Positions 10,717 to 60,295 of a DNA stretch of 64,000 nucleotides are shown one piece after another. This DNA comes from Haliotis rufescens (taxonomy: Eukaryota). The DNA lies in contig NW_025963879.1 in assembly GCF_023055435.1 (NCBI RefSeq), positions 1-64,000 of the forward strand. The letters run 5' to 3'. Within the stretch, counting starts at the first letter, position 1; each line of letters opens with the position of its first letter. The position numbers were made by a program, and so were the translations under genes. Under the pieces are notes generated by a model. It was not told the DNA's origin, did not search any database, and saw nothing but the letters and a program-made list of their open reading frames with translations.

Positions 10717-11934
10717 ATGTTAAAGAAGACATTTGTTGTGATGTTTCCAGTGGTTTTGTTGTTATCAGCCTGTGTTGACAACGTAATGGCTGACACCCAA
10801 GAAAGCCAAAAACAGCTGAACTCGTATCTTGAAACCCGCTTCAATCCCGACGTTCCTCCCATCGACCCACATACCAATGCCATTGATGTACAAATTGCCA
10901 TTGGGCCAGTGCAGGTTCAGGATCTGGTTGATGCTACCCAAGTACTTAAATGCAGAGTGTTTGTGGTGATGAGTTGGAAGGACACATCACTTGCCTGGAA
11001 TGCGTCGGACTACCCCAACGTTGTTCAGACAGAAATCGCTCCACATAAAGCTTGGTCTCCTAATGTGATGTTGTTAAATGCAGCGTTTGGTGATGGTCCT
11101 TTATCGACAACGATGCCCATCACATTAGTCATGGATGGTTCTCTGTATTGGCAGAACATAATCATGGTGTATACAATCTGTAAGACTGATCTGTCCAGAT
11201 ATCCCTTCGATAACCAGACGTGTGACATAACATTCTCATCAGCAATAGGATATCCTGTCATTCTCAATCCATCGGTAATTTCACAAACTCGGGGCCTGAA
11301 GATAAACGCTAACGGAGAGTGGGAAACTAACAATATAACACAGTCGATTCATTCACGTGAAAACGGGACATCATACCAAGCCGCGATCTTTCACATCCAT
11401 CTGTCCAGAAAGTATCTTTTCCACATTTTGAATCTCATCTTCCCGATGTGCCTTCTCTCCTTTCTCAACAGCTTCGTGTTCCTGCTTCCAGCAAGCTCCG
11501 GAGAAAAGATGGGCTACCTCATGGCTGTCTTTGTCTCGAACGCTCTCTTCCTGAGCCTCATCCACGACACTATGCCATCAACCTCTGATTCTGTTTCTAA
11601 CCTCTCTATCTACCAGGTGGCTATCCACATGCAAGGCTTTCTCGCCATCGCTGCCACCATCTTGGTTCAGAACATCTACCACCGACAGCAGAAAACTATG
11701 GAGGAAGGTGCGCATGTAAGATCAAACCACACAAAAGCCATACCTCTTGGCTCCACTGACAATATGGGATCTAGTACCCCAACGCTTCTCAAAGATGGAT
11801 GCAGTCAACCTTCAAATGGACAGAACAGGATCAGGAAGCCTAATGTACCACTGGACATACTTCTGGATGGTATTTTCTTTATTTGTTCTATTATTTTTTC
11901 CATTATTAGCTTATTGTGTCTTCTCCTGGCTTAG
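10717..11934 (+). CDS. Intronless divergent nAChR-like Cys-loop ligand-gated ion channel subunit (paralogue A1)
   Basis: Single ORF with signal peptide (MLKKTFVVMFPVVLLLSAC), WxPN, Cys-loop CKTDLSRYPFDNQTC, NGEW, TM1-LPASSGEK-TM2-TM3, short loop and terminal TM4. Alternative ATG at 10672. Confidence 0.93.
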   Translation: MLKKTFVVMFPVVLLLSACVDNVMADTQESQKQLNSYLETRFNPDVPPIDPHTNAIDVQIAIGPVQVQDLVDATQVLKCRVFVVMSWKDTSLAWNASDYPNVVQTEIAPHKAWSPNVMLLNAAFGDGPLSTTMPITLVMDGSLYWQNIIMVYTICKTDLSRYPFDNQTCDITFSSAIGYPVILNPSVISQTRGLKINANGEWETNNITQSIHSRENGTSYQAAIFHIHLSRKYLFHILNLIFPMCLLSFLNSFVFLLPASSGEKMGYLMAVFVSNALFLSLIHDTMPSTSDSVSNLSIYQVAIHMQGFLAIAATILVQNIYHRQQKTMEEGAHVRSNHTKAIPLGSTDNMGSSTPTLLKDGCSQPSNGQNRIRKPNVPLDILLDGIFFICSIIFSIISLLCLLLA

Positions 11935-12459
11935 AAGCTGTACTGATAGAGCAACATGACCCATTTCAAGGTTTGCAAGTCTGACATTTGATAAAGGACA
12001 TATTTGCTTTCTAGGAACTTCGGGTCTTATGGGACCATATAATACTATATATTGTTTCTTATAAAAAACTGTCCAAAATATCATTTAACAAAGAAGGATT
12101 GGTCAGACCACAAAGCATTCTGCAGCCTTAACAGAGAAACTATGCCCCTTGTCTGGTGCCCACTTCCAGTCTAGATCTAGACGTTGTAATTAGTGCCACG
12201 TGTGATATTTAAGCATTTTCTCAATATAGTTGAGATAGAATTTAACAGATAGATTTATCTACGTGTATAATTATGAAAATACAGACACTAGACAAACAAA
12301 GTGGTGTTTAACATTTTGAATCAATCGCGCTGGGACTGCCAAAATTGGCCCGAGTCTAGTTCCCCTTTTATGCAAATTACATTTACAGATGTTGTCCGTG
12401 TGGTCTGCTCTGCAAACTTTCTCGCTTTGCTTTACATTACCATCACCAAACCGAAGCAA

Positions 12460-12870
12460 AGGAGTTAATTGCCTGTAAAAGTCCAATTTCTAGGCTAGAA
12501 CATATACTTTGGCTGGCCTAACGAGTCTATGTCCAGTCAAATAAAGAATCGGAAACATAATGCCGAGCAGATTTCGGTCGATTGCAGGATAGAGCATATG
12601 TGTCGTCAACTGGGCGTTGACATATATTTTCCAAATCCTTTCATGTTTTTAATCAACGTGCTCAAGTGATTGGATGCGCTTCATTATAGTTTGGTTTTGA
12701 TAATTGATCAGATCGTTTTGACTATGTGCCGCCATTTTGTTTGAAGCAATTACAATAAAATGAGAGGTAGAATCTGATTGATCAATCGGAACGACAAAGA
12801 AGGGAGATACTCGTAGTAGTCCCTGGTTCGGCGGGAGTTGAAACTTGACTTTTATCCCTTGCCTTAGAAG
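12460..12870 (-). mobile_element. Diverged, inverted relative of the 8307-8851 MITE
   Basis: Shared internal blocks in reverse complement (AACAAAATGGCGG, GATCTGATCAATTATCAA, CCTGCAATCGACCGAAATCTGC). Confidence 0.7.
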
Positions 12871-17294: not shown

Positions 17295-18521
17295 ATGTTG
17301 AGGGGGATGAAGCTGCTGGAGATGTGTGTTGTGCTTGTGTGGTTGTCATCAATCTGTGTTCATGTTGTGGCTGACACCCGAGAGAGTATAAAACAGCTGA
17401 ACTCGTATCTTGAAACCCGCTTCAATCCCGACGTTCCTCCCATCGACCCACAGACCAATGCCATTGAAGTAGATATTATGATTGGGCCAGTGCAGGTTCA
17501 GGATCTGGTTGATGCTACCCAAGTACTTAAATGCAGAGTGTTTGTGGTGATGAGATGGACGGACACATCACTTGCCTGGAATGCGTCGGACTACCCCAAC
17601 GTTGATCAGATAGAAATCGCTCCATATAAAGTTTGGTCTCCAAACGTAGCTTTGGTCAATTCTGCCTCTGGTGATGGTACTTTATCGACACTGATGCCCT
17701 TGATGCTGTTAATGAACGGATCTCTGTTTTGGCAGAACATAATGACTGTCTCTACAATATGCAAAACCGATCTATCTAAATATCCATTTGATAACCAGAC
17801 ATGTGACCTTACATTTACATCGACCTTCGGATATTCCATTATCCTACATCCATATGTGGATTCAAACACATATGGTTTAAAGATAAATGCTAACGGAGAG
17901 TGGGAAACTATCAATATAACACGGTCGGTCTCTCCACAGGATGATCACCAACTACACCAACCTGCAACGTTTTTTATCCATCTGTCCAGAAAGCCTCTTT
18001 TCCATATTTTGAACTTCATTTGTCCGACGTGCCTAGTCTCTTTCCTCAACAGCATCGTGTTCCTGCTGCCAGCAGGCTCTGGAGAAAAGGTGGGCTACGT
18101 CATGGCCGTCTTTGTGTCGAACGCTCTCTTCCTAAGTCTCATCCACGACATCATGCCATCAACCTCTGATACTATTTCTTACCTGTCCCTCTACCTCCTT
18201 GGGATTCAACTCCAAGGCTTTCTCGGAATTGTTGGCACAGTCGTGGTACAGAACGTATACTGTCACCAGCAGAACGCCAAGGAGAATGGAGCACACGTAG
18301 AACCAAATCGAACACCTGCAAGATTGAAGCCGACACAAGTTGTGCCTCTTGACTCGCCTGACACGGTGGAGGATCTCAAAGATCAGACCAGACATCAGTA
18401 TTCAAGAACGAGGGCATGCATGAGACTCCGTAATCTCCCACTGGACAGGGCTTTGGATGGTATTTTCTTCATATGCTCCTTTGGCTTTGCTTTGATCATC
18501 TTTCTCTTGCTAGTTGTATAA
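17295..18521 (+). CDS. Intronless divergent nAChR-like Cys-loop subunit (paralogue A2)
   Basis: Signal peptide, Cys-loop CKTDLSKYPFDNQTC, LPAGSGEK and 4 TM helices. First in-frame ATG is at 17295. Confidence 0.93.
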   Translation: MLRGMKLLEMCVVLVWLSSICVHVVADTRESIKQLNSYLETRFNPDVPPIDPQTNAIEVDIMIGPVQVQDLVDATQVLKCRVFVVMRWTDTSLAWNASDYPNVDQIEIAPYKVWSPNVALVNSASGDGTLSTLMPLMLLMNGSLFWQNIMTVSTICKTDLSKYPFDNQTCDLTFTSTFGYSIILHPYVDSNTYGLKINANGEWETINITRSVSPQDDHQLHQPATFFIHLSRKPLFHILNFICPTCLVSFLNSIVFLLPAGSGEKVGYVMAVFVSNALFLSLIHDIMPSTSDTISYLSLYLLGIQLQGFLGIVGTVVVQNVYCHQQNAKENGAHVEPNRTPARLKPTQVVPLDSPDTVEDLKDQTRHQYSRTRACMRLRNLPLDRALDGIFFICSFGFALIIFLLLVV

Positions 18522-18609
18522 ATGGTACAACCATATAGTTTAGTCTTTTAGTGCGTGGCTTTCTAAAGAAATATATAATCTCAGTTTCAGTTTCGTTTGA
18601 CGTAGGATT

Positions 18610-18825
18610 GCCGCACTCAGCAATATTCCAGCCATATGACGGCGGTCTGTAAATAATCGAGTCTGGGCCAGAAAACCCAGTGATTGACATCATGAGCATC
18701 GATCCACGCAATTGGGATACGATGACATGCAAGTCAGCGAGCCTGACCACCCGATCCCGTTAGTCGCCTCTTACGACAAGCAGAGTCGCTTTTTACAGCA
18801 AAAGTTGCTGAAGACCTATTCACGG
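18610..18825 (-). mobile_element. SINE-like family M copy marking the left edge of the tandem array
   Basis: Its right half and downstream flank recur at each unit junction (26839-27072, 35762-36000, 44039-44278). Confidence 0.85.
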
Positions 18826-20345
18826 ATGATTTGACGGAGGAAAAATACTGGGATGTTTTCTACTTTATCAAACATTGATTATTTATATGATATCAAAAGG
18901 CTCGAGGATGAGAGTATATTTATTATCCGATTACCCGGAATCAATTATCACAAACATATTTGATTAAGTTGGTGAGAACATGAAATTGTGTTGATCGTTA
19001 GGACGCACGGAAGAGCAAAAAAACATTCACATGTAGCACTTATTTTATTCGACTAACTTTTGCGGCCTTACCGTTTAGTGCGAAACCAATATGAAATCAC
19101 TGTCATTATATTTACATACGGCTATTAATCCTAAACATAAAGTTAACCAAGTTCTCTGAAGAAGATTAGGGTAAGAATTACATCTGTTGAGAAAGACCGT
19201 GGGCATCGGGCTGCAAATGTAAGACAGATATTATCTAAATGTGGTTATGGATGAATAAACTTACTCAGTTCTATTAACTCTTGCACACAAAGTTAAAGGA
19301 TATGTTCGCAAAACTAATGTCAATTTTATTCTTCATCTCATAGATTTCTGTGTACTGTGTTCTATGTGTCATCGTACCCGACAACGAGTAACGGGATCGG
19401 GTGGTCAGCACATGTTTGATAATAACGTTAAAACATTTAGACATTTAGATGTTCTTCATAAGAGCTTGGAACTGAAGTTGGACCGTCCACTGATATGACA
19501 AGGAATACGGGAATATGTACACAGCGCAACCTTCATAGAGTGGAAGATATGTATCCTGGCATGTCCATTCTTAGTCTTGCACCATGACTATAAAAACATA
19601 TCTAGAAACGCATACAAAAGCAAGTCTAGACAGCTCCAGCTAGCTCTATTCCACATGAAATCAGCTTAGGGAATTTTTTAATTCAAGAAGGATATTGTGT
19701 AATATAAGATTTCATGGACTAAATGTTAGTCTAGTCCATACTATACTCCCTTAGAAATAAGATATACCATTTTAGTATATCCATATACTAGTATATATAT
19801 ATATGGCTTTGTTAAAAAGTTCTAATAATTGTGTTTGGGTGTGTTGGTGTGTGGGTGTGTGGGTTGAGTAAGTGAGTGACTGACTGAGTTTAATGCCACT
19901 TTGAACAGTATTTCAGTGATGTCATGACGTGTCACTGATTTTGAATTGTTGTCTATTTCTTTTTGTTCATGGTTAAATAAGCATTCTGTAAATGTAGTTT
20001 TGTGGACATATTTATCCATGAGTTTTGGCTTCAGTATGTTTTAGCGTCTATTGAGTTACAAGCGTACACGTCAGTGTGCGCAATGCCGCTTCCACTCTAC
20101 ATTCTACAACTATCCCTCCATAAACAGAACTGAAGTATAAAGTTTTAGGAATTCGCATATAAATGATGGCTATGGATTACTTTACCACCTGCTGAAGATG
20201 ACACTGAGATCTGTTTAACTGCCAAGTGTTTCTTTAAATTGAGTTCATGTTTAAAGATCGCCCATGAATTGTGTTAGAAGCTTTTATTGTCTTCACAAAA
20301 CTTTAAATAGCCACTTCCTATGCCAATTTACCGGGCGATGCTAGT

Positions 20346-20670
20346 GGATTTCTCATTTGATTTGTGAATTGTGTTGCAAAACATGTATATATTTATGTGG
20401 GTTATAGTCTAGAAACACGATTCTGATGGATTTCTCATTCGATTTGTGAATTGCGTTGCAAAACATGTATATATTTATGTGGTTTAAAGTCTAGAAACAC
20501 GATTCTGATGGATTTCTCATTCGATTTGTGAATTGCGTTGCAAAACATGTATATATTTATGTGGGTTATAGTCTAGAAACCAGATTCTGGGGGAATTCCC
20601 ATTCGAATTGTGAATTGTGTTGCAAAAAGGTATTGATGTAAATGTATGGGTTTATATGTCCAGAAACAGG
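20346..20670 (+). repeat. 82-bp minisatellite (~4 copies; ~3 at 29628-29870; ~4 at 37549-37870)
   Basis: Unit starts at 20346, 20428, 20510 and ~20592. Confidence 0.88.
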
Positions 20671-21139
20671 ATAACACCTATATGTATTAAACTGTTAGTG
20701 CGAGTTTCATTCAATGTCATTTAATATATATCACAACCAAAGAGTTAGTAAGTGGGTTCGCATTGACTAGTATATCATTAGATTCGTGTCAGCTTGTGGG
20801 TGGAAAGACTGAAGGGATGCAGGTCTTAGACGTTTACCGCTTTGTGAAATCTACGAGCACAGCTATAGTGCTGACAAACCTAGAAACATAATCAAGCAGA
20901 CCTGGGATTAATACCATGGATAATATATATATGGCACGCCCAAGGGACACGCGTCTCTGCACAGTTGGTTGGTTGGCTGGTTTGTTGTTTAACGCGACAC
21001 TCAGCAATATCCCATCTACATGACGGCGGTCTGTAAATAATCGAGTCTGGACCAGACAATCCAGTAATTAATATCATGAGCATCGATCAACGCAATTGGG
21101 ATGAATGACATGCATCAAACCTCGTCATTGAACCTATGA

Positions 21140-21669
21140 ACAAACCTATGATTGTGGGTTCGAATCCCGGTTCGCCCCGATTATGTATCTAGGTTTGTCA
21201 GCACCATACCCGTGCTCGTGGGTTTCACCGAAGTGGTCAACGTCTGAGACCGCTTTCTTCCCACATTAAGCTGACACGCCGTGATATAACTGGAATACTG
21301 TTAAAAGCGGCGTTAAACCCAACTCACCCACTCACTCACACAATTGGCTACCATACACACATCAATATGTTGTGGCTTGGTCATTAGTGAAAGGGGGCAC
21401 GGGTGGCCCAGTCGTCTAAGGCGCCGCGGTTTGCTGTGCAGAGTTGCGTCCCTTGGGCACGCCAGAAACCTATGATTGTGGGTTCGAATCCCGGTTCGCC
21501 CCGATTATGTTTCTAGGTTTGTCAGCACCATACCCGTGCTCGTGGGTTTCACCGAAGTGGTAAACGTCCGAGACCTGCATCACTTTGGGCTTTCCTCCCA
21601 CATTAAGCTGACACGCCGCGATATAACTGGAATACTGTTAAAAGCGGCGTTAAACCCAACTCACTCACT
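21140..21669 (+). mobile_element. Pair of SINE-B copies (first 5'-truncated); repeated at ~30340-30870, ~38343-38872, ~47626-48229
   Basis: The second copy has TSD ATTAGTGAAAGG. Same arrangement in all four units. Confidence 0.85.
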
Positions 21670-21932
21670 GATTAGTGAAAGGTGCATCTCCCAAGGGAGA
21701 TGATCATCCATCTGTGACGCCACCATAAACATTATTTTATTTTATGTCTTTATTTCGTTCATCGTAATCCCCGCGTGTATTCCGGGACAGAATGGATCCC
21801 ATCACAAACTGCTTCTCCCGTGAGCCGACAATTATAGGGATAATGTGATTACAGAGTACGACCAGTTTGATTGTGCGGTCGAGTCCGGATCGTTGTTATC
21901 TACTATATTGCCTATCCCTGATCTGAATAATC

Positions 21933-22090
21933 GGGTAGCCTAGTGGTTAAAGCGTTCGCTCGTCACGTTGAAGACCCGGGTTCGATTCCCGACATGGGAA
22001 CAATGTGTGAAGCCCATTTCTGGTGTCCCCTGCCGTGATATTGCTGGAATATTGCTAAAAGCGGCGTAAAATCAATCTCACTCACTCACT
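21933..22090 (+). mobile_element. Short tRNA-derived SINE family A (also ~39137-39293)
   Basis: TAGCCTAGTGG A box, GGTTCGATTCC B box, shared 3' tail and TCTGAAT direct repeat. Confidence 0.85.
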
Positions 22091-22387
22091 CTGAATTATT
22101 AGAGGCCGCTCAGATATAATATAGTTGACTGCATCGCAAAACAGTCACCCTTTCAAGTTAACATTTGAGTCATTAAGCGCTTCTCATACCTGTTATCCCA
22201 AATCAGTTCCGTATAGATTCCATTACCTGTAATTTGCCTTTCAAAATTGGATGTATCCTTAATTATGCTGTTAGTGAAATTCAACAAATGCAACATAACC
22301 GATGTCCTGATAGTGACAAAAATCATTTCTGGTAATGCCTTAAGTTAGTCTGACAGTACATGTTATCAGTTTGGGTAGTAGATACTA

Positions 22388-23783
22388 TACTCACACACAA
22401 AATAAACGCAAGTGGTTTTAAGCAAATAGGTAACAAACACGGAACCATAAATTGAAACGAGTTTTAGCATGTAGTGAAGCCTGATGGTGTTATCAATATT
22501 TTTGGTTGCATTTTGGAAGCCCCGAGTAAAAACGCAACATAAAAAACACATCGCCAAAATGCACCATTTCAATGAATATATGGGTATCATGCACCCATTT
22601 CTCGCGAAATCAAAAATGCACGAACTGTCACGAACTGTAGTGGGTATAAAAGTGTGGCCGATTCTTGGACCTACCACTCCTTGGTTAACAATGCCACGCC
22701 TAACTCAAATTCAGAGAAACCAGGCTATCGGACGTTTGGAAGCTGGAGAGTCTGTCCAAGATGTTGCCCGTCATTTCAACGTTAACATAACCACAATTTA
22801 CCGTCTCCTGCATCGATACAATGCTACACAGACCACAGATGACCTTCCTCGGAGCGGTCATCCTAGGGTCACCACACCTCGACAAGATCGGCAGACACTG
22901 CGATCCGACGTCTCCGTTCCAACAACCTCAGATGTCGCCGACCAGCACGTCGTCCTGTTCTCCAACCACGGCATCGACAAGCACGACTTCAGTAGGCACA
23001 GGGTCATCGCAATTGGCGTCATCGTAAGTGGAGGCGTGTCATCTTCTCTGATGAAAATCGCTTTTGTGTCTCCCATGCAGACGGAAGAGTCAGAATTTGG
23101 CGACGTCGAGGTGATCGTTTCGCTGACAGAAACGTTGTTGAAAGGGATCCATGAGGTGGACCTAGCGTCATGATATGGGCATGGATTGGACTTAATGCGA
23201 GACTTGGAACCCTGTGCTTTCTGAATGTTGGTCAAGGTCGGGGACACAGCGTCACTGCTCAGCGGTATATCGACAAAGTGATCAGACCCATTTTCAAGCA
23301 GGACAATGTTCGTCCCCATGTTGCCAGAGCTACCATGGCCTTTCTGCAACAACACAACATCCGTGTTCTACCGTGGCCAGCCCTGAGGCCTGATCTGGGA
23401 TGAGGTTCAAAGGCGTCTGCACAATGTGCGCCCAGTCCCTACAACTGCCCATGAACTACGCACAGCTGCTCTGGATGTGTGCAGGAGGATCCCTAGGGCC
23501 TTCACAAATCGTCTGATCCACTCAATGTACAGGAGATGTGTGGCAGTGATCAATGTTAATGGTGGTCACACCAGGTATTGACTGACATTTTGGGTATTGA
23601 CCCTAAAATGCTGTGTAAGCCCTTAACATTTGAAAAAAATAATTATGTCATCTACCTTTTAATCAATTATACTGTCTTCAGTCAATTTTTTGTCAATCTT
23701 GCCCTATTAGTATTTCTTGTCTTTACTGTTGAAAATAAATAACATGTAAACTGCACACCCGACGTTTCTTTTGAGTGTGAGTA
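22388..23783 (+). mobile_element. Tc1 transposon (unit 1 copy), defective
   Basis: ~21-bp imperfect TIRs with TA TSD. Transposase starts MPRLTQIQRNQAIGRLEAG at 22691 and ends GGHTRY at 23581, with frameshifts and a stop. Confidence 0.9.
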
Positions 23784-24574
23784 TATTTTATGCCAAATAA
23801 ACAATGAAATCTGTATCATGTAACCCCACTTACAATTTCACAAAGCTTTAGCACATGAACTTCTCCGTAATTATAGGTGGCACAGACACAATACACAACA
23901 ATAACCAAAAAACACAAATATACATTTTTATATGTTATTACCATTTTCATTTTTACCATCCCTTGGGAAACAAAACTTAAAAGGAACATATTAGCACCAG
24001 CATTTATAAATATATGTGAATACGTTTTCCCATTCTAGCACTTAACACTATTTACACTTTGAAGACATAAACAATTGACAATTACACGATACGATTCCTA
24101 TTGCCTAATTCCGTGATAGTTATGTTTACATTCTATTTCCACCTGTTGTACAGGTAACCATTTCAACAGCAAACGTGTCCAGTGGAATGCGTTAATTTGT
24201 TTGTTCGCTTAAGACAATGCAATGCTGGATAATGATCGGCACCGACCAACCTCATAGCATTAAAAAACATTCATTTTCTGATTGATTTTTGTTCACGTGG
24301 CGCATTAATGATTTAAGAAATTCAGTTTTGTGCACATCTAGACCAAACAGTTCACCATGGATGTGGATATGAGAAATTGATTTGCACCGACCAAACCCAC
24401 CTTAAAACATTCTTATACATTCATTATCTGATTGATTTCGTCAATTCATGTGAGGCACGAATGATTTAAGACAAGCAGCTTTGTGTAATCTTCACAAAAC
24501 AGTCCATCATGCTTGATGTGGAAATATAATTCTGTACGTACATTGTAGTTAAACAGACGGAGGTTGTGTTGAAA

Positions 24575-45160: not shown

Positions 45161-45310
45161 GTCTCTGCGCAGCGACTAACGGGGCCTTTAGACATTTAGG
45201 TCACCCGTGCGGCCGTGCACCATAATACAAGGGTAGGATTTTCTCTCTTGCAGACAGTTAAACCTGTCGTACGTAATTAAGTTAAACAATCTACACATGT
45301 TATATTACTT

Positions 45311-45470
45311 GAGTGAGTGATGTGTTACGCCGCTTTTAGCAATATTTCAGCAATATCACGGCGGGGGTCACCACAAATGGGCTTCACACGTTGTACCCAT
45401 GTCGGGAATCGAACACAGGTCTTCAACGTGACGAGCGAACACTTTAACCACTAGGCTACCCAACCGCCCC
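45311..45470 (-). mobile_element. SINE family A copy
   Basis: Reverse complement of 21933-22090. Confidence 0.85.
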
Positions 45471-46672: not shown

Positions 46673-46912
46673 TTGTTTATTTGTTTGTTGTTTGACGCCG
46701 TTCACAGCAATATTCAAGCTATATGACGGCGGTCTGTGAATAATCGAGTCTGGACCAGACAATCCAGTGACTGACATCATGAACATCGATCCACGCAATT
46801 GGGAAGCGATGACATGCATCAACCAAGTCAGCGACCCTGACCACCCGATCCCGTTAGGCACCTCTTACGACGAATATAGTCACCTTTTACGGCAAGCCTG
46901 GGTTGTTGAAGC
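46673..46912 (-). mobile_element. SINE-like family M copy
   Basis: Match to the family consensus. Confidence 0.8.
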
Positions 46913-48669
46913 TTAATACATTGCATTGAATAAAATGGGATATTACAAATGTACTCATTCTATAATTATGTCAATTTTTTCCAACGTGCCATGTGTACAC
47001 TTAATTCATACAGTGTGTTTCACTTTTAATATCTGTATCCTCATACCTTTACCTGTCTACATGGATGTATACCTATTTCTGTTCCACTGTGACAAGTGTG
47101 AACTCAAGGTTCCTACGCATAATCTGGATGGTTTCTAAAACCCTATATTGGATCCTGGGACTTGCCCACGTGGTGAAGATACAAGTGGTGAGATACAACG
47201 TCTGTACCTTACACGTGTGCCGTACAAGGCTGAATTCGTTTGGATTGGATAACTGTGACCTCGGTCGCATCGGGACTACCTTTTGTATTCATAAACAATC
47301 ACAGAAACGTCATTCACTTTACAACATTTTACTTCTACGAGCTAGAACTGAAGGAATCTCACGAAAACGAGAGACATTTACAAACAGTATATTAAACCAA
47401 ACAAGATATTCACACGCGTCAAATTCGCTTAGCATTCTATATTGGTTATGTATCGAGATGCTACAGACAAAATGAACTATTTCCATTACCATGTGAACGA
47501 CGTCATAGCTGAAGTTTTGCTGAGTGCGACTATAAGCAACAAACAGAGATTACCATGTGTGACTACAGATAGATGTGGTCTATGTGAGCGTGATACACCC
47601 GACCACTTTCCCTCAATTCAAAGAACGGGGGAACGGGTGGCCCAGTCGTTTAAGGCGCCGAGATTCGCTGTGCAGAGTTGCGTCCCTTGGTCATGTCAGA
47701 AACCTATGATTGTGGGTTCGAATCCCGGTTCGCCCCGATTATGTATCTAGGTATGTCAGCACAATACCCGTGCTCGTGGGTTTCACCGAAGTGGTAAACG
47801 TCTGAGACCGCTTTCTTCCCACATTAAGCTGACACGCCGTGATATAACTGGAATACTGTTAAAAGCGGCGTTAAACCCCACTTACCCACTCACTCACACA
47901 ATTGGATACCATACACACATCAATATGTTGTGGCTTGGTCATTAGTGAAAGGGGGCACGGGTGGCCCAGTCGTCTAAGGCGCCGCGGTTTGCTGTGCAGA
48001 GTTGCGTCCCTTGGGCACGCCAGAAACCTATGATTGTGGGTTCGAATCCCGGTTCGCCCCCATTATGTTTCTAGGTTTGTCAGCACCATACCCGTGCTCG
48101 TGGGTTTCACCGAAGTGGTAAACGTCCGAGACCTGCATCACTTCGGGCTTTCCTCCCACATTAGGCTGACACGCCGCGATATAACTGGAATACTGTTAAA
48201 AAGCGGCGTTAAACCCAACTCACTCACTGATAAGTGAAAGGTGCATCTCCCAAGGGAGATGATAATCCATCTGTGACGCCACCATAAACATTATTTTATT
48301 TTATGTCTTTATTTCGTTCATCGTAATCCCCGTGTGTATTACTCACTCACTCTGAATTATTAGAGGCCGCTCAGATGTAATATAGTTGACTGCATCGCAA
48401 AACAGTCACCCTTTCAAGTTAACATTTGAGTCATTAAGCGCCTCTTGTACCTGTTATCCCCAATCAGTTCCGTATAGATTCCATTACCTGTAATTTGCTT
48501 TTGGAATTGGATGCATACTTAATTGAAATTGGATGTATACTTAATTATGCTGTTAGTGAAATTCAACAAATGCAGCATAACCGATGTCCTGATAGTGACA
48601 AAAATCATTTCTGGTAATGCCTTAAGTTAGTCTGACAGTACATGTTATCAGTTTGGGTAGTAGATACTA

Positions 48670-50048
48670 TACTCACACACAAAATAAACGCAAGTGGTTT
48701 TAAGCAAATAGGTAACAAACACGGAACCATAAATTGAAACGAGTTTTAGCAGTGTAGTGAAGCCTGATGGTGTTATCAATATTTTATGTTGCATTTTGGA
48801 AGCCCCGAGTAAAAACGCAACATAAAAAACACATCGCCAAAATGCACCATTTCAATGAATATATGGGTATCATGCACCCATTTCTCGCGAAATCAAAAAT
48901 GCACGAACTGTCACGAACTGTAGTGGGTATAAAAGTGTGGCCGATTCTTGGACCTACCACTCCTTGGTCAACAATGCCACGCCTAACTCAAATTCAGAGA
49001 AACCAGGCTATCGGACGTTTGGAAGCTGGAGAGTCTGTCCAAGATGTTGCCCGTCATTTCAACGTTAACATAACGACAATTTACCGTCTCCTGCATCGAT
49101 ACAATGCTACACAGACCACAGATGACCTTCCTCGGAGCGGTCATCCTAGGGTCACCACACCTCGGCAGACACTGCGATCCGACGTCTCCGTTCCAACAAC
49201 CTCAGATGTCGCCGACCAGCACGTCGTCCTATCTCCAACCACGGCATCGACAAGCACGACTTCAGTGGGCACAGGGTCATCGCAATTGGCGTCATCGTGA
49301 GTGGTGGCGTGCCATCTTCTCTGATGAAAGTCGCTTTTGTGTCACCCATGCAGACGGAAGAGTCAGAATTTGGCGACGTCGAGGTGATCGTTTCGCTGAC
49401 AGAAACGTTGTGGAAAGGGATCCATGGGGTGGACCTAGCGTCATGATATGGGCAGGGATTGGACTTGGAACCCTGTGCTTTCTGAATGTTGGTCAAGGTC
49501 GGGGACACAGCGTCACTGCTCAGCGGTATATCGACCAAGTGATCAGACCCATTTTCAAGCAGGACAACGCTCGTCCCCATGTTGCCAGAGCTACCATGGC
49601 CTTTCTGCAACAACACAACATCCGTGTTCTACCGTGGCCAGCCCTGAGGCCTGATCTGGGATGAGGTTCAAAGGCGTCTGCACAATGTGCGCCCAGTCCC
49701 TACAACTGCCCATGAACTACGCAAAGCTGCTCTGGATGTGTGCAGGAGGATGCCTAGGGCCTTCACAAATCGTCTGATCCACTCAATGTACAGGAGATGT
49801 GTGGCAGTGATCAATGTTAATGGTGGTCACACCAGGTATTGACTGACATTTGGGGTATTGACCTTAAAATGCCGTGTAAGCCCTTAACATTTGAAAAAAA
49901 TAATTATGTCATCTGCCTTTTAATCCATTAAACTGTCTTCGGTCAAATTTTTGTCAATCTTGCCCTATTAGTATTTCTTGTCTTTACTGTTGAAAATAAA
50001 TAACATGTATACTGCATACTCGACTTGTGTTTCTTTTGAGTGTGAGTA
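48670..50048 (+). mobile_element. Tc1 transposon (unit 4 copy), defective
   Basis: Same element. Lacks the internal stop seen in the other copies (DPWGG). Confidence 0.9.
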
Positions 50049-51324
50049 TATTTTATGCAAAATAAACATTGAAATCTGTATCATGTAGCCCCGCTTACAA
50101 TTTCACAAAGCTTTAGCTCATGAACTTCTCCGTCATTATAGGTGGCACAGACACAATATTATTTGCAGAATTATCAGCCACAGAAAGAAGGTAGTTTTGG
50201 ACATAAACACTAATTGAAGGAACATAATAGCATCCACCTTAAAATCTCCACGAACCTATATAATGTGGGGACATTTGTACCCATGCAGAGATACAAGTGA
50301 TAAAGATGCGCTGTGTCCGGGTGGCGATCCTTCTTGTTGTTGTTGTGGTGGTGGCGTTCCTTTTTGTTGTTGTTGTTGTTGTTGTTGCACCTCTAGAGTC
50401 TCTCCGATGTTCCGCCTGACAGTCTGAAACGAATTTGGGGAGCATCGTCAAGAAGTGAAGGATATGGCGCTACTTCTGGAACAAAACGAGTCTGAAGGAA
50501 TGAACGTGTTACCTATAGATCTATTGACACAGAGGAGCGTTTACCGACATATTGATACATCTTCACTGGCAAGAACAATTTGAAGAAACAACTTTTTTTC
50601 ACCACTGCCAACAACAAATATAGCTGGCACATTGAGTTTGGCGTTAAACAATAACCAAAAAACACAAATATACATATTTATATGTTATTACCATTTTCAT
50701 TTTTACCATCCCTTGGGAAACAAAACTTAAAAGGAACCTATTAGCACCAGCATTTATAAATACATGTGAATACGTTTTCCCATTCTAGCACTTAACACTA
50801 TTTACACTTTGAAGACATAAACAATTGACAATTACACGATACAATTCCTATTGCCTAATTCCTTGATAGTTATGTTTACATTCTATTTCCCCCTTTTGTA
50901 CAGGTAACCATTTCAACAGCAAACGTGTCCAGTGGAATGCGTTAATTTGTTTGTTCGCTTAAGACAATGCAATGCTGGATAATGATCGGCACCGACCAAC
51001 CTCATAGCATTAAAAAACATTCATTATCTGATTGATTGTGGTTCACGTGGCGCATCAATAATTTAAGAAATTCAGTTTTGTGCACATCTACACAAAACAG
51101 TTCACCATGGATGTGGATATGAGAAATTGATTGGCGCCGACCAAACCCACCTTACAACATTCTTATACATTCATTATCTGATTGATTTCGTCAATTCATG
51201 TGAGGCACGAATGATTTAAGACAAGCAGCTTTGTGTAATCTTCACGAAACAGTCCATCATGCTTGATGTGGAAATATAATTCTGTACGTACATTGTAGTT
51301 AAACAGACGGAGGTTGTGTTGAAA

Positions 51325-52536
51325 ATGAGCTGCATTACACTCGTATTCCTTGTGGCTACATCTCTTGTGTCACTCAGTGCTACTGATGTTGAAGCTGACC
51401 GGAGGCAGAGTCTGAAGACCCTCAAGTCTCATCTTGAGACTCTTTTAGATCCAGAATTACCGCCGATAAATCCACATTCGAATGCTATTGACGTAGCTAT
51501 TAAAATCGGGCCAGTGCAGGTTCATGATTTGGTTGATACAACCCAAGTTCTCACACTGGGAACCAATGTGATAATGCATTGGAAAGATATGGCTCTAGTT
51601 TGGAATACATCTGACTATTCGGACATCAGTAAAATAGAGATATCTCCAGACAAGGTATGGCAGCCTAATGTGGTTTTGGGGAGCAAGGCTTTTGATGACG
51701 GTCCCTTACGGACAACGATGCCCATTCAGTTGAAAAGTGACGGCTCACTGTCTTGGCACAATGTCATGACGATTTCAGTGATATGCAAGACCTTCCTCTC
51801 AAGATATCCATTTGATAGCCAGATTTGTCCAATGACATTTACCCCAGGAAAGGGATATGACATAATCCTGCATCCATCCGTCATTTTTTTCACTCATGGT
51901 TTGAAGGTAGACACTAATGGAGAGTGGGAGACTGTCAACGTTACGTCCTCAACATCACCCTATGCCGATGGAAGTACATTCCAGGGTGCAATATTCTACG
52001 TTCATCTGTCCAGAAAATACTTGTTCCACATCTTGAACCTGGTTTTCCCAATGTGCCTACTATCTTTCCTGAACAGCTTCGTTTTCCTTCTGCCGGCTAG
52101 CTCGGGGGAGAAGATGGGCTTTCTCATGGCTGTGTTTGTGTCAAACGCACTGTTCCTCAATCTGATCCACGCTTCCATGCCGTCAACGTCTGATACAGTT
52201 TCTAACCTCTCTCTCTACCTCGTCGCAATCCAAATTGAAGGTTTTCTCGCCATCGCTGCCACCATCTTGGTACAGAACGTTTACCACTGCCAGATGAACA
52301 GGAAGGAGAGCGGTGCAAAGATGACACAGGTTGTGCCTCAGGATTGCCTCCAGAATGCCATGGCTAGTCCTATCACTGCTGAGACCCCTACCGTGCATAC
52401 GGATCGCCAACATGGGGAGACAATGAATTGCTCAAATAAGAGAATCCCTTCACTGGACAGAAAGCTGGATTGTGTTTTCTTTGTATGTTTCACTGTTTTC
52501 GCCATTGTAGGCTTATTGTGTCTCATTTTTGGATAA
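51325..52536 (+). CDS. Intronless nAChR-like Cys-loop subunit copy B4
   Basis: Intact ORF, near-identical to B2. Confidence 0.93.
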   Translation: MSCITLVFLVATSLVSLSATDVEADRRQSLKTLKSHLETLLDPELPPINPHSNAIDVAIKIGPVQVHDLVDTTQVLTLGTNVIMHWKDMALVWNTSDYSDISKIEISPDKVWQPNVVLGSKAFDDGPLRTTMPIQLKSDGSLSWHNVMTISVICKTFLSRYPFDSQICPMTFTPGKGYDIILHPSVIFFTHGLKVDTNGEWETVNVTSSTSPYADGSTFQGAIFYVHLSRKYLFHILNLVFPMCLLSFLNSFVFLLPASSGEKMGFLMAVFVSNALFLNLIHASMPSTSDTVSNLSLYLVAIQIEGFLAIAATILVQNVYHCQMNRKESGAKMTQVVPQDCLQNAMASPITAETPTVHTDRQHGETMNCSNKRIPSLDRKLDCVFFVCFTVFAIVGLLCLIFG

Positions 52537-53596
52537 ATGTGTACGTGAAAGTGACACAGATCCCGCTTCAAAGCAAAAAGACGCACGCTTTTTTCAAGTC
52601 AACAAAAGTCACGTGATATTGCACAAAGTTACCCTCAGATCCATCGAACAGCTGTTTTCTAACAATTTTGAATTTGTTTTTATTCTTTTACAATGTCATA
52701 TTAAAACATGTCAGTAAGACAAATGCGTTGTGGCAGTATATCTCGGGGTACATGGCGTTTTTATGCGTCTGGCTCATGACACCTAACGCAGGACGAATAA
52801 AACCACATCTACCCCTCATGATACTGCTACAAATTATATGACACCTTCGGATACATGATGGCGTGAAATCTGAAAATATCCTCACGCATCCTTGATAATA
52901 TATTCATTGCACACTGACGTCAAGGCTTCCTTGCATTTAATGGCTAATACATTGTTTCTTCAATATCCTTGACACTATATGTTATTTTCGTTTGTTTTAT
53001 TTCCAGATTATTTCTTCACTTTGATATTTTAACAACGTGAGACAAATTGTCTGACATGACACTTCTCGTTGCTTGTTGTTTACTGCATTTGTTATTAAGG
53101 GAAGTGTTTGGTTTCCTATTCAGATGGAGTAAAAGATATCGCTACTTACTTTTGTCCTTAAATTGCTTTCAAATGTTCGCTTTGCAGAGTTGCGTTCCGT
53201 GGGAGAACCAGAAAATATGATTATTGGCATGTGTTTTATCATTGCATTTGTTACGAAACATTAAGACCAAATATTATGTTTATATCAATAACATAACATT
53301 TACGCCACTCTCTATGAATCACAGTTACTTTTTTCGCTATTATGTTATATATTTATGTGCAGATGTGTAATGTGTGTTGTTGGTTTTAAGTAATTATTAA
53401 AGTTCCCTATACCGTGATATATTTAACCTCGTTGTATGGTCTATGGTACATAAATTGACATGGTTTAAATGATAAGCAGGAAAGCCATTACTGTGCATTT
53501 AGAAGTTGCATAAGAAATGGATTTTGTTGATGGGACAATAACAATCTAACAATTGATACTTCGTAATTGAAACTGGAGATACTAATGGTGTTACTG

Positions 53597-53851
53597 TGTG
53601 TTTGTTGTTTAACCCCGTACTTAGCAATATTCCAGCTATATGACGACGGTCTGTAAATAATCGAGTCCAGACAATCCAGTGATTGACATCATGAACATTG
53701 ATCCACGAAATTGGGATCGATGACATGCATCAACCAAGTCAGCGAACCTGACCACCCGATCCCGTTAATCGCCTTTTACGACAAGCATAGTCGCCTTTTA
53801 CGGCAAGCATGGGTTGCTGAAGACCTATTCTACCCCGGATCTTCACGGGTC
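53597..53851 (-). mobile_element. Full SINE-M marking the right edge of the tandem array
   Basis: 11-bp TSD TGGTGTTACTG at 53586-53596 and 53852-53862. Confidence 0.88.
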
Positions 53852-57980: not shown

Positions 57981-58052
57981 TATTTAAAGATGAGGTGAGC
58001 TGAGGTGAAATTGGGTTTAACGTCGCGTCCAAAATTTATGCACTTATAATAN

Positions 58053-58243
58053 NNNNNNNNNNNNNNNNNNNNNNNNNNNNNNNNNNNNNNNNNNNNNNNN
58101 NNNNNNNNNNNNNNNNNNNNNNNNNNNNNNNNNNNNNNNNNNNNNNNNNNNNNNNNNNNNNNNNNNNNNNNNNNNNNNNNNNNNNNNNNNNNNNNNNNNN
58201 NNNNNNNNNNNNNNNNNNNNNNNNNNNNNNNNNNNNNNNNNNN
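58053..58243. other. Assembly gap
   Basis: N run. Confidence 1.
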
Positions 58244-58447
58244 ATGCCGCAGTTTAACATGAATACCCCACTCAGACACAGTATACTGACTCCGAGCCGA
58301 CCAGTCCTTGTTTTAGCACCTTAATGCCGAGTGCCAGACAGGGTAACAACAAGTACCATCTTTAAACGTCTTTTGGTATGACGCGGCCAAGGATCGAACT
58401 CCGGACCATCCGCTCTCCGGGCAGACCACTAGACCACGGAAGCGGTC
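58244..58447 (-). mobile_element. tRNA-derived SINE family C (related copy at ~7960-8175)
   Basis: Minus strand reads GTGGTCTAGTGG..GAGTTCGATCC..GTCATACCAAAAGAC..GGTACTTG. Abuts the assembly gap. Confidence 0.75.
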
Positions 58448-59083
58448 ATTTAATGATGATGTGAAGCAAGTTGTAATGAACTCGATAACGAAGGAATGAC
58501 TCCACCTATGATTGCAGCATACACAGGATCTCAGTGATAACACAGTGCTATCAGCTATTGCACACAATATCAAACAAGAAAGCGTGAATACTGCTGCGGG
58601 TGGCATTAAACAACAAACAAACCAAACAAATACACATATTTGGATCAATTTACACGGTATATGAATAGTCTTATAAAACACCCCTTGGGACAATACAGTC
58701 TAATCAACTAATGGTATCAGCGTTGAAAATCAGGACAATCCATGTAAATACGTTCTAATAGTAATTGAGACTTACACATTAAAACCAGTTGCATTACCTA
58801 GTTTATTGATAGTTAATTATGTTTACATTCCATTTCCCCCTTTTGTACAGGTAATCGTTTCAAAATCAAAAATGGATAGTGGAGTGCGTTAAGTGGGTTC
58901 TTTAATATATGGGACAATGACTGCCACCGACCAACCTCACAATAGTATATATATTCAATATAGGAGTTCGTCCTTCCATGGATAAGCTTTGTGCACATCT
59001 CCAAGAAACGGTCCACAATGCAAGGTGTGGTTAGGTAATACTGCGTGTAATTTTGAGTGATACAGACGGAGGTTGTGTTGAAA

Positions 59084-60295
59084 ATGAGCTGCATTACACT
59101 CGCATTCCTTATGGCTACATCTCTTGTGTCACTCAGTGCTACTGATGTTGAAGCTGACCGGAGGCAGAGTCTGAAGACCCTAAAGTCTCATCTTGAGACT
59201 CTTTTAGATCCAGAATTACCACCGATAAATCCACATTCGAGTGCTATTGACGTAGCTATTACAATCGGGCCAGTGCAGGTTCATGATTTGGTTGATACAA
59301 CCCAAGTTCTCACACTGGGAGCCAATGTGATAATGCATTGGAAAGATATGGCTCTAGTTTGGAATACATCTGACTATTCGGACATCAGTAAAATAGAGAT
59401 ATCTCCAGACAAGGTATGGCAGCCTAATGTGGTTTTGGCGAACAAGGCTTTTGATGACGGTCCCTTACGGACCACAATGCCCATTCAGTTGACAAGTGAC
59501 GGCTCACTGTCTTGGCACAATGTCATGACGATTTCAGTGATATGCAAGACCTTCCTCTCAAGATATCCATTTGATAGCCAGATTTGTCCAATGACATTTA
59601 CCCCAGGAATGGGATATGACATAATCCTGCATCCATTCGTCAATTTTTTAACTCATGGTTTGAAGGTAGACACTAATGGAGAGTGGGAGACTGTCAACGT
59701 TACGTCCTCAACATCAACCTTTGCCAATGGAGGTACATTCCAGGGTGCAATATTCTACGTTCATCTGTCCAGAAAATACTTATTCCACATCTTGAACCTG
59801 GTTTTCCCAATGTGCCTACTGTCTTTCCTGAACAGCTTCGTTTTCCTTCTGCCTGCTAGCTCGGGGGAGAAGATGGGCTTTCTCATGGCTGTGTTTGTGT
59901 CAAACGCACTGTTCCTCAATCTGATCCACGATTCCATGCCGTCAACGTCTGATACAGTTTCTAACCTCTCTCTCTACCTCGTCGCAATCCAAATCGAAGG
60001 TTTTCTCGCCGTCGCTGCCACCATCTTGGTACAGAACGTTTACCACTGCCAGATGAACAGGAAGGAGAGCGGTGCAAAGATAACACAGGTTGTGCCTCAG
60101 GATTGCCTCCAGAATGCCATGGCTAGACCTATCACTGCTGAGACCCCTACCGTGCATACGGATCGCAAACATGGGGAGACAATGAATTACTCAAAAAAGA
60201 GAATCCCTTCACTGGACAGAAAGCTGGATTGTGTTTTCTTTGTATGTTTCACTGTTTTCGCCATTGTGGGCTTATTGTGTCTCATTTTTGGATAA
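59084..60295 (+). CDS. Intronless nAChR-like Cys-loop subunit copy B5 (most divergent B copy)
   Basis: Intact ORF. Differs from B1-B4 mainly in extracellular loops and at the M2 20' position. Confidence 0.93.
   Translation: MSCITLAFLMATSLVSLSATDVEADRRQSLKTLKSHLETLLDPELPPINPHSSAIDVAITIGPVQVHDLVDTTQVLTLGANVIMHWKDMALVWNTSDYSDISKIEISPDKVWQPNVVLANKAFDDGPLRTTMPIQLTSDGSLSWHNVMTISVICKTFLSRYPFDSQICPMTFTPGMGYDIILHPFVNFLTHGLKVDTNGEWETVNVTSSTSTFANGGTFQGAIFYVHLSRKYLFHILNLVFPMCLLSFLNSFVFLLPASSGEKMGFLMAVFVSNALFLNLIHDSMPSTSDTVSNLSLYLVAIQIEGFLAVAATILVQNVYHCQMNRKESGAKITQVVPQDCLQNAMARPITAETPTVHTDRKHGETMNYSKKRIPSLDRKLDCVFFVCFTVFAIVGLLCLIFG

What the first reader, a model, noticed from the sequence alone, without database searches (positions are those of the whole stretch)
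10717..60295. Tandem array of seven intronless, probably ACh-insensitive nAChR-like channels: candidate chemosensory receptor family
Seen: seven same-strand single-exon ORFs with signal peptide, C-x13-C Cys-loop, four TM helices and a short M3-M4 loop. Known: canonical nAChR genes are intron-rich, whereas cephalopod chemotactile receptors are intronless, tandemly arrayed nAChR derivatives lacking the ACh site. Intronless nAChR expansions are also reported in other molluscs. Inference: this is a lineage-specific, possibly retroposition-founded and still expanding array of ionotropic sensory receptors, apparently in a non-cephalopod mollusc. It could detect contact chemicals such as food or settlement cues.
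Basis: partly seen in the sequence, partly recalled or inferred. Interest (0 to 1): 0.9.

Follow-up and report, generated by a model that had tools for sequence, protein, structure and literature searches.

The report
Abalone tandem array of nicotinic-like channels
This is a cluster of six intact genes and one broken gene for nicotinic-receptor-like ion channels that have lost the acetylcholine site; it is one of dozens of such clusters in this abalone genome, a gene expansion already described in molluscs, and nothing yet shows what the channels sense.

Summary
There are seven same-strand, single-exon Cys-loop receptor genes, but copy 3 carries a 2-bp deletion that puts its first 88 codons out of frame, so six are intact and one is broken.

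The assembly gap at 58052-58243 is intergenic. It lies 5.5 kb after copy 6 and 841 bp before copy 7. It interrupts no receptor ORF, but copy 7's linkage to the array rests on that join.

The genome is a Haliotis, probably H. rufescens. It holds well over 100 such single-exon genes in many arrays, so this is a new member of a known kind (Jiao 2019, PMC6896357).

Shown here:
- Copies 3-6 lie in 8.2-9.6 kb DNA-level repeat units that are 95-98% identical and bounded by SINE copies.
- The coding sequences have undergone gene conversion.
- The clade contains only Haliotis sequences.
- Loop A Tyr, loop B Trp, the loop C Cys pair and loop D Trp are all lost.
- The -1' Glu and the gating core are kept.
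- Differences between the young copies cluster in the binding loops (omega about 1.5, against 0.16 elsewhere).

There is no special kinship with cephalopod chemotactile receptors. The scan's first readers noted two other such arrays in this genome.

The parts
10717..11934 (+). c1: intact single-exon Cys-loop receptor gene, 405 aa from the ATG at 10717
   Evidence: Pfam LBD 9.8e-30 and TM 3.1e-13. Signal-like N-terminus, Cys-loop and M1-M4. 57% identical to c4. A public spliced model, P0011, overlaps it.
17322..18521 (+). c2: intact single-exon Cys-loop receptor gene, 399 aa; alternative upstream ATGs at 17295 and 17307
   Evidence: Pfam. P0005 is this gene. It groups with the H. rubra model P0003. 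It shares a conversion tract with c1 at 10807-11030.
24575..25784 (+). c3: frameshifted copy; a 2-bp deletion after 24836 splits it into 24575-24836 and the ORF 24837-25784
   Evidence: It is otherwise 99% identical to c4.
33497..34708 (+). c4: intact gene, 403 aa; used as the reference copy here
   Evidence: AlphaFold2 model with pLDDT 78.9. Best structural match is alpha7 nAChR, Z 27.8.
41778..42989 (+). c5: intact gene, 403 aa
   Evidence: dS 0.011 against c4.
51325..52536 (+). c6: intact gene, 403 aa
59084..60295 (+). c7: intact gene, 403 aa; the coding sequence is 95.5% identical to c3-c6 but the flanks only 73-75%
   Evidence: This pattern points to gene conversion of the coding sequence. 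Of its 19 replacement differences from c4 in the mature protein (signal peptide left out), 14 lie in the binding loops.
18610..53830 (+). Block of four tandem repeat units, 8.2-9.6 kb each and 95-98% identical, each carrying one gene (c3-c6). It starts 89 bp after the c2 stop.
   Evidence: Self-BLAST and alignment of the downstream regions.
18730..18761 (+). SINE core at the first unit junction. The same core occurs at 26977, 35900, 44177 and 53735.
   Evidence: A 32-mer gives 10 matches in the window against 0 expected, five of them at the junctions. The copies after c2-c5 share the same truncated 3' end.
22484..23173 (+). Transposase-like helix-turn-helix ORF (Tc1/IS630 type), a remnant carried inside the repeat unit. 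It is repeated at 39687-40376, with shorter copies at 31407-31949 and 48767-49300.
   Evidence: Pfam HTH_23 1.8e-07 and HTH_Tnp_IS630 1.2e-04. ORF list.
58052..58243 (.). Assembly gap, intergenic between c6 and c7
   Evidence: Its letters were neither filled in nor looked up.

Best explanation
The region is a birth-and-death tandem array of single-exon genes for divergent nicotinic-type Cys-loop receptor subunits. Six are intact and one is frameshifted. The genome is an abalone's, and the array belongs to a very large intron-poor 'nAChR-like' expansion of the kind already described in molluscs.

The array has three old lineages: c1, c2 and the c3-c7 group. The c3-c6 part grew recently, by unequal crossing-over between SINE copies that flank a unit of about 8.5 kb. 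Coding sequences are partly homogenised by gene conversion.

The proteins keep everything needed to build a pentameric cation channel: the signal peptide, the Cys-loop with YPFD, the pre-M1 Arg, the SGEK motif with the -1' Glu, a hydrophobic 9' Val and the M2-M3 Pro. They have lost the loop A Tyr, the loop B Trp, the loop C vicinal Cys pair and the loop D Trp that bind acetylcholine.

Inferred, not shown: they form cation channels gated by something other than acetylcholine. After duplication, selection preserves the channel scaffold while the orthosteric loops are free, or driven, to change. The ligand and the tissue remain unknown.
For: Domains.

Anatomy.

Fold: alpha7 nAChR Z 27.8, and all top hits are pentameric ligand-gated channels.

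Residue mapping onto alpha1 and delta nAChR chains, with family-wide columns:
- Y93 becomes G, A, L or V.
- W149 becomes G, A or T.
- C192/C193 are absent.
- delta W57 becomes N or F.
- The -1' Glu is kept.

Purifying selection: omega is 0.17-0.25 between the old lineages, and 0.16 outside the binding loops between c4 and c7.

Differences cluster in the binding loops. 17 of 18 variable LBD sites fall in loops A-G (binomial p = 8e-6). With narrower loop limits it is 14 of 18 (p = 4e-5). Loop omega is 1.5 against 0.16 for the rest (Fisher p = 0.012).

Tandem units and SINE junctions.

Gene conversion.

Haliotis-only clade.

Genome-wide family: 150 scored LBD matches out of 502 candidates, mostly whole domains in open frames of 385-450 aa.

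Published precedent: PMC6896357.
Against: - There is no expression or functional evidence of any kind.
- Loop omega is not significantly above 1 (14 replacement against 3 silent changes, where neutrality predicts about 13 to 4; p = 0.38). Relaxed constraint fits as well as diversifying selection.
- I set the loop boundaries after seeing the variable sites.
- Non-alpha subunits of real nAChRs, such as beta1, also lack binding residues. Loss of the site in one subunit therefore does not prove that the assembled channel ignores ACh.
- One copy is already broken.
- No transcript-derived protein clustered with c3-c7 in the protein database. The P0001 cluster has 6 members on 1 contig. This is only weak evidence.
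Confidence: 0.75

Rival explanations
1. Chemosensory receptors. The channels sit in the peripheral sensory epithelia of tentacles, epipodium, osphradium or larvae. They are gated directly by environmental chemicals such as food, biofilm or settlement cues, and arose in parallel with cephalopod chemotactile receptors.
For: The ACh site is lost. The genes are single-exon and tandemly arrayed, with fast turnover. Differences between young copies concentrate in the ligand-binding loops while the scaffold is conserved. In octopus chemotactile receptors, positively selected sites likewise concentrate in the pocket (PMC11526382). A 2026 preprint proposes this role for divergent gastropod clades (PMC13174522).
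Against: No expression data could be obtained. The proteins are no closer to CRT1 or CRB1 than to alpha7 or Alpo4. The same features are shared by more than 100 paralogues here. In bivalves such genes are reported from early development and from immune and stress responses rather than from sense organs.
Confidence: 0.25
2. Non-sensory signalling channels. As reported for the expanded bivalve genes, they act in early development or in immune and stress responses, gated by an endogenous non-ACh ligand or modulator.
For: Jiao 2019 reports that expanded, intron-poor molluscan nAChR genes are expressed in early development and are up-regulated by infection and stress. The scaffold is under purifying selection.
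Against: An endogenous ligand would predict conserved binding loops. Here the loops evolve at or near the neutral rate: omega is 0.7-0.9 against the C556 paralogue and about 1.5 among the young copies.
Confidence: 0.2
3. Accessory or structural subunits. They co-assemble with ACh-binding subunits encoded elsewhere and tune conductance, trafficking or desensitisation. The assembled channel is still ACh-gated, and the subunits' own orthosteric loops are unused and drift.
For: The best PDB sequence match is the Torpedo delta chain, a non-alpha subunit. Non-alpha subunits lack the Cys pair, and delta also lacks the loop B Trp (alignment). Near-neutral loop evolution alongside a conserved transmembrane core and gating core fits unused pockets.
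Against: Over long spans the loops are still constrained: omega is 0.25-0.49 between the old lineages. It is hard to see why more than 100 accessory subunits would be needed. Comparable orphans that lack the motifs (octopus chemotactile receptors, Alpo4) do not respond to ACh (PMC10338036).
Confidence: 0.15
4. Mostly redundant by-products of an unstable SINE-rich locus. The young copies add little function and are on their way to becoming pseudogenes.
For: c3 is already frameshifted. Whole-gene omega among the young copies is 0.4-1.8, based on very few changes. No transcript-derived cluster members were seen. Jiao 2019 notes that more intron-poor than intron-rich genes have no or low expression.
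Against: Outside the loops omega is 0.16 between c4 and c7 (5 replacement against 9 silent changes). Six of the seven ORFs are intact, and all core residues are invariant.
Confidence: 0.15

Closest known systems
Expanded intron-poor nAChR-like genes of molluscs (Jiao et al. 2019, BMC Genomics 20:937, PMC6896357)
   Same: The coding sequences are intronless, the genes sit in tandem arrays of up to 7-12 genes, and paralogues cluster by lineage. Sequence divergence is high and includes the ligand-binding residues. This abalone genome holds more than 100 such ORFs.
   Different: That study analysed other molluscs and does not mention Haliotis. Here the recent growth is demonstrably DNA-level, by SINE-bounded units, rather than by retroposition. 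Binding-loop-focused divergence is shown between near-identical copies.
Cephalopod chemotactile receptors CRT1 and CRB1 (PDB 9e6b, 8eiz)
   Same: Both are nAChR-derived pentameric-channel subunits without the ACh signature motifs. Both have single-exon coding sequences, occur as tandem families, and vary most in the binding pocket.
   Different: There is no closer relationship than to ordinary nAChRs: 22% and 19% identity at Z 21.3 and 20.9, against 24% at Z 27.8 for alpha7. Neither appears among the 60 best PDB sequence matches. Expression in sensory cells and gating by hydrophobic ligands are unknown here. I could not obtain chemotactile receptor sequences for a joint tree.
Alpo4, orphan nAChR-like channel of the annelid Alvinella pompejana (PDB 8bx5; PMC10338036)
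   Same: It is a lophotrochozoan expansion member that lacks the agonist motifs and has no known agonist. Distance is similar: 24% identity, Z 23.6.
   Different: It comes from a different phylum and clade. Alpo4 has been purified and its structure solved, whereas these proteins are only predicted.
Non-alpha subunits of heteromeric nAChRs (for example Torpedo delta, PDB 2bg9_C)
   Same: This is the best sequence match, E = 3.7e-34. It has no vicinal Cys pair and no loop B Trp, and it shares the SGEK cation-selectivity motif.
   Different: Delta keeps the complementary-face Trp57, which is Asn or Phe here. The vertebrate genes are intron-rich single-copy genes with long M3-M4 loops.

Membership tests
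Cys-loop (pentameric ligand-gated) receptor superfamily, cationic nicotinic-type branch | Neur_chan_LBD plus Neur_chan_memb domains above Pfam cut-offs | tested here: met
   All seven copies: LBD 66-111 bits (cut-off 26) and TM 51-52 bits (cut-off 28.1).
Cys-loop (pentameric ligand-gated) receptor superfamily, cationic nicotinic-type branch | C-x13-C Cys-loop, four transmembrane helices and the pLGIC fold | tested here: met
   Cys-loop at 154-168 and hydropathy peaks for M1-M4. AlphaFold2 model with pLDDT 78.9. alpha7 nAChR match at Z 27.8 over 337 residues.
Cys-loop (pentameric ligand-gated) receptor superfamily, cationic nicotinic-type branch | Cation-selectivity signature: Glu at -1' (SGEK) and no Pro-Ala-Arg motif | tested here: met
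   'SGEK' precedes M2 in all copies. Ion selectivity itself was not measured.
Acetylcholine-gated nAChR subunit with a working agonist site | Principal face: loop A Tyr93, loop B Trp149, loop C Tyr190, Cys192-Cys193 and Tyr198 (alpha1 numbering) | tested here: not met
   Y93 becomes G, A, L or V. W149 becomes G, A or T. The Cys pair is absent. Only the Y190 and Y198 positions keep Tyr or Phe in c3-c7 (alignment to 9avu_A).
Acetylcholine-gated nAChR subunit with a working agonist site | Complementary face: loop D Trp (delta W57 / alpha7 W55) | tested here: not met
   Asn81 in c3-c7 and Phe in c1 and c2 (alignment to 2bg9_C).
Acetylcholine-gated nAChR subunit with a working agonist site | Current evoked by acetylcholine | not testable with these tools
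   This needs heterologous expression.
Cephalopod chemotactile receptors (CRs) | Membership of the CR clade | tested here: inconclusive
   No chemotactile receptor sequence could be brought into a tree. Proxies show no affinity: CRT1 22% and CRB1 19% identity against alpha7 24%, and neither is in the top 60 PDB phmmer hits. The nearest relatives are all Haliotis.
Cephalopod chemotactile receptors (CRs) | Expression in sensory epithelium and gating by poorly soluble ligands | not testable with these tools
Cephalopod chemotactile receptors (CRs) | Diversifying selection focused on the ligand pocket | tested here: inconclusive
   Loop omega is 1.5 against 0.16 for the rest (Fisher p = 0.012), but it is not significantly above 1 (p = 0.38). 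The loop limits were chosen post hoc.
Molluscan intron-poor nAChR expansion (Jiao 2019) | Intronless coding sequence, tandem arrays and lineage-specific clustering of paralogues | tested here: met
Molluscan intron-poor nAChR expansion (Jiao 2019) | Retroposition hallmarks at the copy (poly(A) tail, homology limited to the transcript) | tested here: not met
   The c3-c6 units include 7 kb of intergenic DNA. c7's homology ends 50 bp after the stop codon with no A-tract, and its flanks are still 73-75% alignable. Target-site duplications were not looked for. An ancient founding retroposition is not excluded.

The most novel reading that the evidence does not exclude
Abalone, and perhaps gastropods generally, recruited nAChR-derived channels as ionotropic chemoreceptors independently of cephalopods. 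On this reading the array is a young, actively diversifying receptor cluster whose binding loops are being tuned to environmental ligands such as algal, biofilm or settlement cues.
Probability: 0.2. Interest if true: 0.75.

Novelty: new member of a known kind. Interest (0 to 1): 0.35.

Why it matters
If the channels proved to be sensory, they would show that neurotransmitter-gated channels were turned into chemoreceptors at least twice within molluscs. They would also give abalone biology, including larval settlement and feeding, a candidate receptor family.

As it stands, the array is a clean, datable example of how such families grow. SINE-mediated unequal crossing-over and gene conversion act together, the channel scaffold is kept under purifying selection, and change is concentrated in the binding loops. 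The copies differ at few enough sites that chimeras between c4 and c7 could map ligand specificity once any agonist is found.

Tried and rejected
- **Joint phylogeny with octopus and squid chemotactile receptors.** Two protein searches, one with a single sequence and one with a 35-sequence profile, returned 17 and 24 hits and no cephalopod. The CR papers PMC10228259, PMC7605239 and PMC10262778 are not held. No chemotactile receptor sequence was available by reference, so that tree was left out.
- **ESM Atlas.** It gave only generic nAChR clusters.
- **Recent retroposition as the origin of c7.** Rejected: there is no poly(A) tail and the flanks are still alignable.
- **A receptor ORF crossing the gap.** Rejected.
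- **Other ORFs in the window.** Only transposase-like remnants had Pfam hits.
- **Complex prediction.** Not used. A pentamer exceeds the size limit, and no binding claim in this report depends on it.
Full report
**Observation**

The window holds seven + strand ORFs of 315-422 aa. All seven match Pfam Neur_chan_LBD and Neur_chan_memb well above the curated cut-offs. From the first plausible ATG the genes are:
- c1 10717-11934
- c2 17322-18521
- c4 33497-34708
- c5 41778-42989
- c6 51325-52536
- c7 59084-60295

Every copy has the C-x13-C Cys-loop (154-168 in c4) and four hydropathy peaks placed as M1-M4. The M3-M4 loop is about 65 residues. The six intact copies also have a hydrophobic N-terminus.

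The third copy is not intact. Relative to c4 it lacks 2 bp after 24836. Its first 88 codons (24575-24836, signal peptide included) are therefore in another frame from the 315-aa ORF at 24837-25784. So there are six intact genes and one frameshifted copy, unless the deletion is an assembly error.

**The gap**

The N run at 58052-58243 lies 5.5 kb after the c6 stop and 841 bp before the c7 ATG. No receptor ORF touches it. The minus-strand ORF on its right stops before reaching it, and the one on its left begins 81 bp short of it. Frame continuity is therefore not an issue for the genes. However, c7's linkage and orientation relative to c1-c6, and the completeness of its upstream region, rest on the scaffold join. 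A second gap at 62230-62380 lies outside the array.

**Source genome and the wider family**

The best named relatives are all Haliotis proteins. A public H. rufescens model, P0011, maps onto c1, exactly over its first 131 residues, and lies on a contig of the same length as the window's. The genome is therefore very probably red abalone.

The window is the first 64 kb of a 25.7 Mb scaffold. Searching the whole genome with c4 gave 103 scored matches out of 374 candidates. Searching with the Pfam LBD model gave 150 scored matches out of 502 candidates. Most of these are whole domains inside uninterrupted frames of 385-450 aa, grouped in many tandem clusters.

I cut out 20 such places. They yielded 22 complete single-exon ORFs, each with a Cys-loop. 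This array is therefore one of dozens in the genome. The scan's first readers have flagged two others, s1-814391 and s1-816349. The second is the pair I sampled as L004.

**How the array is built**

Self-comparison shows that c3-c6 sit in repeat units that are 95-98% identical over their whole length, intergenic DNA and a transposase remnant included. The block starts 89 bp after the c2 stop.

A SINE core occurs at every junction: 18730, 26977, 35900, 44177 and 53735, spaced 8.2-9.6 kb apart. Five further copies lie elsewhere in the window, against none expected by chance. The junction copies after c2-c5 share the same truncated 3' end, whereas the one after c6 continues differently. This is the signature of unequal crossing-over between SINEs, which is DNA-level duplication and not retroposition.

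c7 shares only the coding sequence plus about 99 bp upstream and 50 bp downstream at high identity. No A-tract marks that boundary. Its flanks still align to c4's at 73-75%, while the coding dS is only 0.045. This points to gene conversion of the coding region.

c1 and c2 show a second conversion tract at about 10807-11030, with no synonymous and 8-9 replacement differences, against many synonymous differences elsewhere.

**Age and selection**

- c1 against c2: dS 0.61, omega 0.39.
- c1 or c2 against c3-c7: dS 1.4-1.9 (saturated), omega 0.17-0.25.
- Among c3-c6: dS 0.004-0.022.
- c7 against c3-c6: dS 0.03-0.056.

The array therefore combines three old lineages under purifying selection with a very recent burst.

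In the maximum-likelihood tree a Haliotis-only clade with 99/97 support holds all the window genes. c2 pairs with an H. rubra model, which is itself a fusion of two adjacent genes, so the c1/c2 part of the array is old. c3-c7 are sister (100/99) to a singleton on another scaffold (C556, 67% identical), which has orthologues in H. cracherodii and H. rubra.

Outside Haliotis, identity falls to 43% for an unnamed protein and to 38% or less for named ones. There is thus no one-to-one orthology to a conserved subunit.

**The agonist site and the pore**

The tool-printed alignments to muscle alpha1 and Torpedo delta allow direct mapping:
- alpha1 Y93 becomes G119 (A in c7, L in c1, V in c2).
- W149 becomes G175 (A in c1, T in c2).
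- C192-C193 are deleted.
- Y190 and Y198 become Y or F, and F, in c3-c7.
- delta W57 becomes N81 (F in c1 and c2).

Both faces of a canonical ACh site are therefore dismantled.

None of the 22 sampled genomic paralogues has the Cys pair, and only some keep the loop B or loop D Trp.

The channel machinery is intact. YPFD in the Cys-loop, the pre-M1 Arg, SGEK with the -1' Glu, a hydrophobic 9' Val and the M2-M3 Pro are all present, and 16 core positions are invariant across 35 sequences. From established pLGIC knowledge this predicts a cation-selective pentameric channel. Insensitivity to ACh is an inference. It is supported by the published behaviour of other motif-less members, the octopus chemotactile receptors and Alpo4 (PMC10338036).

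**Where the young copies differ**

Among c3-c7, 18 LBD positions vary. Of these, 17 fall in the seven classical binding loops A-G, which cover 91 of 209 LBD residues (binomial p = 8e-6). With narrower loop limits the count is 14 of 18 (p = 4e-5).

Between c4 and c7 the loops carry 14 replacement and 3 silent changes (omega about 1.5). The rest of the mature protein carries 5 and 9 (omega 0.16; Fisher p = 0.012). One beta1 (loop G) codon reads K, A, T, K, T in the five copies.

Against the C556 paralogue the loops have omega 0.7-0.9 and the rest 0.33. Between the old lineages the loops are constrained, with omega 0.25-0.49.

Two caveats apply. I fixed the loop limits after seeing the data. Loop omega is also not significantly above 1 (p = 0.38), so relaxed constraint on the loops fits as well as diversifying selection. 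What is firm is that the young copies are not drifting as a whole, because their scaffold is strongly conserved.

**Comparison with known systems**

The AlphaFold2 model (pLDDT 78.9; the loop at 333-373 is disordered) matches several structures:

| Structure | Z | Identity |
|---|---|---|
| alpha7 nAChR | 27.8 | 24% |
| muscle nAChR subunits | 27.0-27.2 | 21-22% |
| beta2 nAChR subunit | 26.0 | 24% |
| Alpo4 | 23.6 | 24% |
| octopus CRT1 | 21.3 | 22% |
| squid CRB1 | 20.9 | 19% |

By sequence, 60 nAChR and 5-HT3 entries rank above any chemotactile receptor. So the family resembles chemotactile receptors in kind (motif-less, single-exon, tandem, pocket-variable) but shows no closer descent.

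The general phenomenon is published. Jiao et al. 2019 describe 11-120 intronless nAChR genes per mollusc, arrays of up to 12 genes, lineage-specific clustering, and expression in development and in immune and stress responses (PMC6896357). A 2026 preprint describes a 'CR-like' clade in gastropods, bivalves and chitons. It explicitly proposes that divergent nAChR clades may be ionotropic chemoreceptors of gastropod sense organs (PMC13174522). I found no paper on these genes in abalone.

**What could not be done**

- No chemotactile receptor sequence could be obtained by reference for a joint tree.

Expression, transcript structure and orthologous loci in other abalone therefore remain untested. 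The only hints are weak ones. A public spliced model of c1 uses GTAAGA donors inside the ORF. The 90% protein cluster of c3-c7 has no member from any other contig.

**Verdict**

It is an ordinary member of a known molluscan gene expansion. The chemosensory reading is reasonable but untested, at about one chance in four. The new elements are local: SINE-mediated growth, gene conversion, and binding-loop-focused divergence between near-identical copies.

Noticed in passing
window 18730, 26977, 35900, 44177, 53735 (+); also 569(-), 3557(+), 9602(-), 45066(+), 46824(+): An interspersed SINE-like element marks every junction of the tandem units. The copies after c2-c5 share one truncated 3' end, whereas the copy after c6 does not. 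This fits unequal crossing-over between SINEs as the duplication mechanism.
   Followed up: partly
window 10807-11030 (c1) and the matching part of c2: A tract of about 75 codons has no synonymous and 8-9 replacement differences between c1 and c2, while the rest of the genes has dS of about 0.6. It looks like a recent conversion tract followed by amino-acid change, including in the beta1 (loop G) region.
   Followed up: partly
window 33674-33676 and the same codon in c3, c5, c6 and c7: Codon 60, in the beta1 strand, reads K, A, T, K, T in five copies that are otherwise 95-99% identical.
   Followed up: partly
window 10786-11981: A public H. rufescens protein model (P0011, 230 aa) splices c1 as 10786-11178 + 11491-11718 + 11913-11981. 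It uses GTAAGA donors inside the ORF, removes the Cys-loop and M1, and ends out of frame. It could be an annotation artefact or real aberrant splicing.
   Followed up: partly
window 22484-23173, 39687-40376; shorter copies at 31407-31949 and 48767-49300; also 14077-14562(-): Remnants of Tc1/IS630-type transposase are present. A helix-turn-helix ORF is carried inside each repeat unit, and there is a weak DDE_3 hit between c1 and c2.
   Followed up: partly
window 60353-60547: A degenerate satellite with a unit of about 18 bp (ACGTAAATTGTAATAATA) starts 58 bp after the c7 stop, just after c7's homology to c3-c6 ends at 60345.
   Followed up: no
G000: C594 40.50-40.61 Mb and 46.32-46.57 Mb; C124 13.60-13.73 Mb; C301 0.45-0.50 Mb; C246 5.60-5.86 Mb; C113 6.30-6.38, 7.91-7.99 and 10.03-10.07 Mb; C23 0.31-0.36 Mb: There are many larger tandem arrays of single-exon Cys-loop receptor ORFs, with 10 or more genes each in several places. 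Some of these lineages keep the loop B and loop D Trp and a 9' Leu.
   Followed up: partly
G000:C101:3518500-3518952: A fragment 67% identical to c4 residues 188-349 carries an in-frame TGA. It is probably a dead relic of the same clade, 3.5 Mb away on the same scaffold.
   Followed up: no
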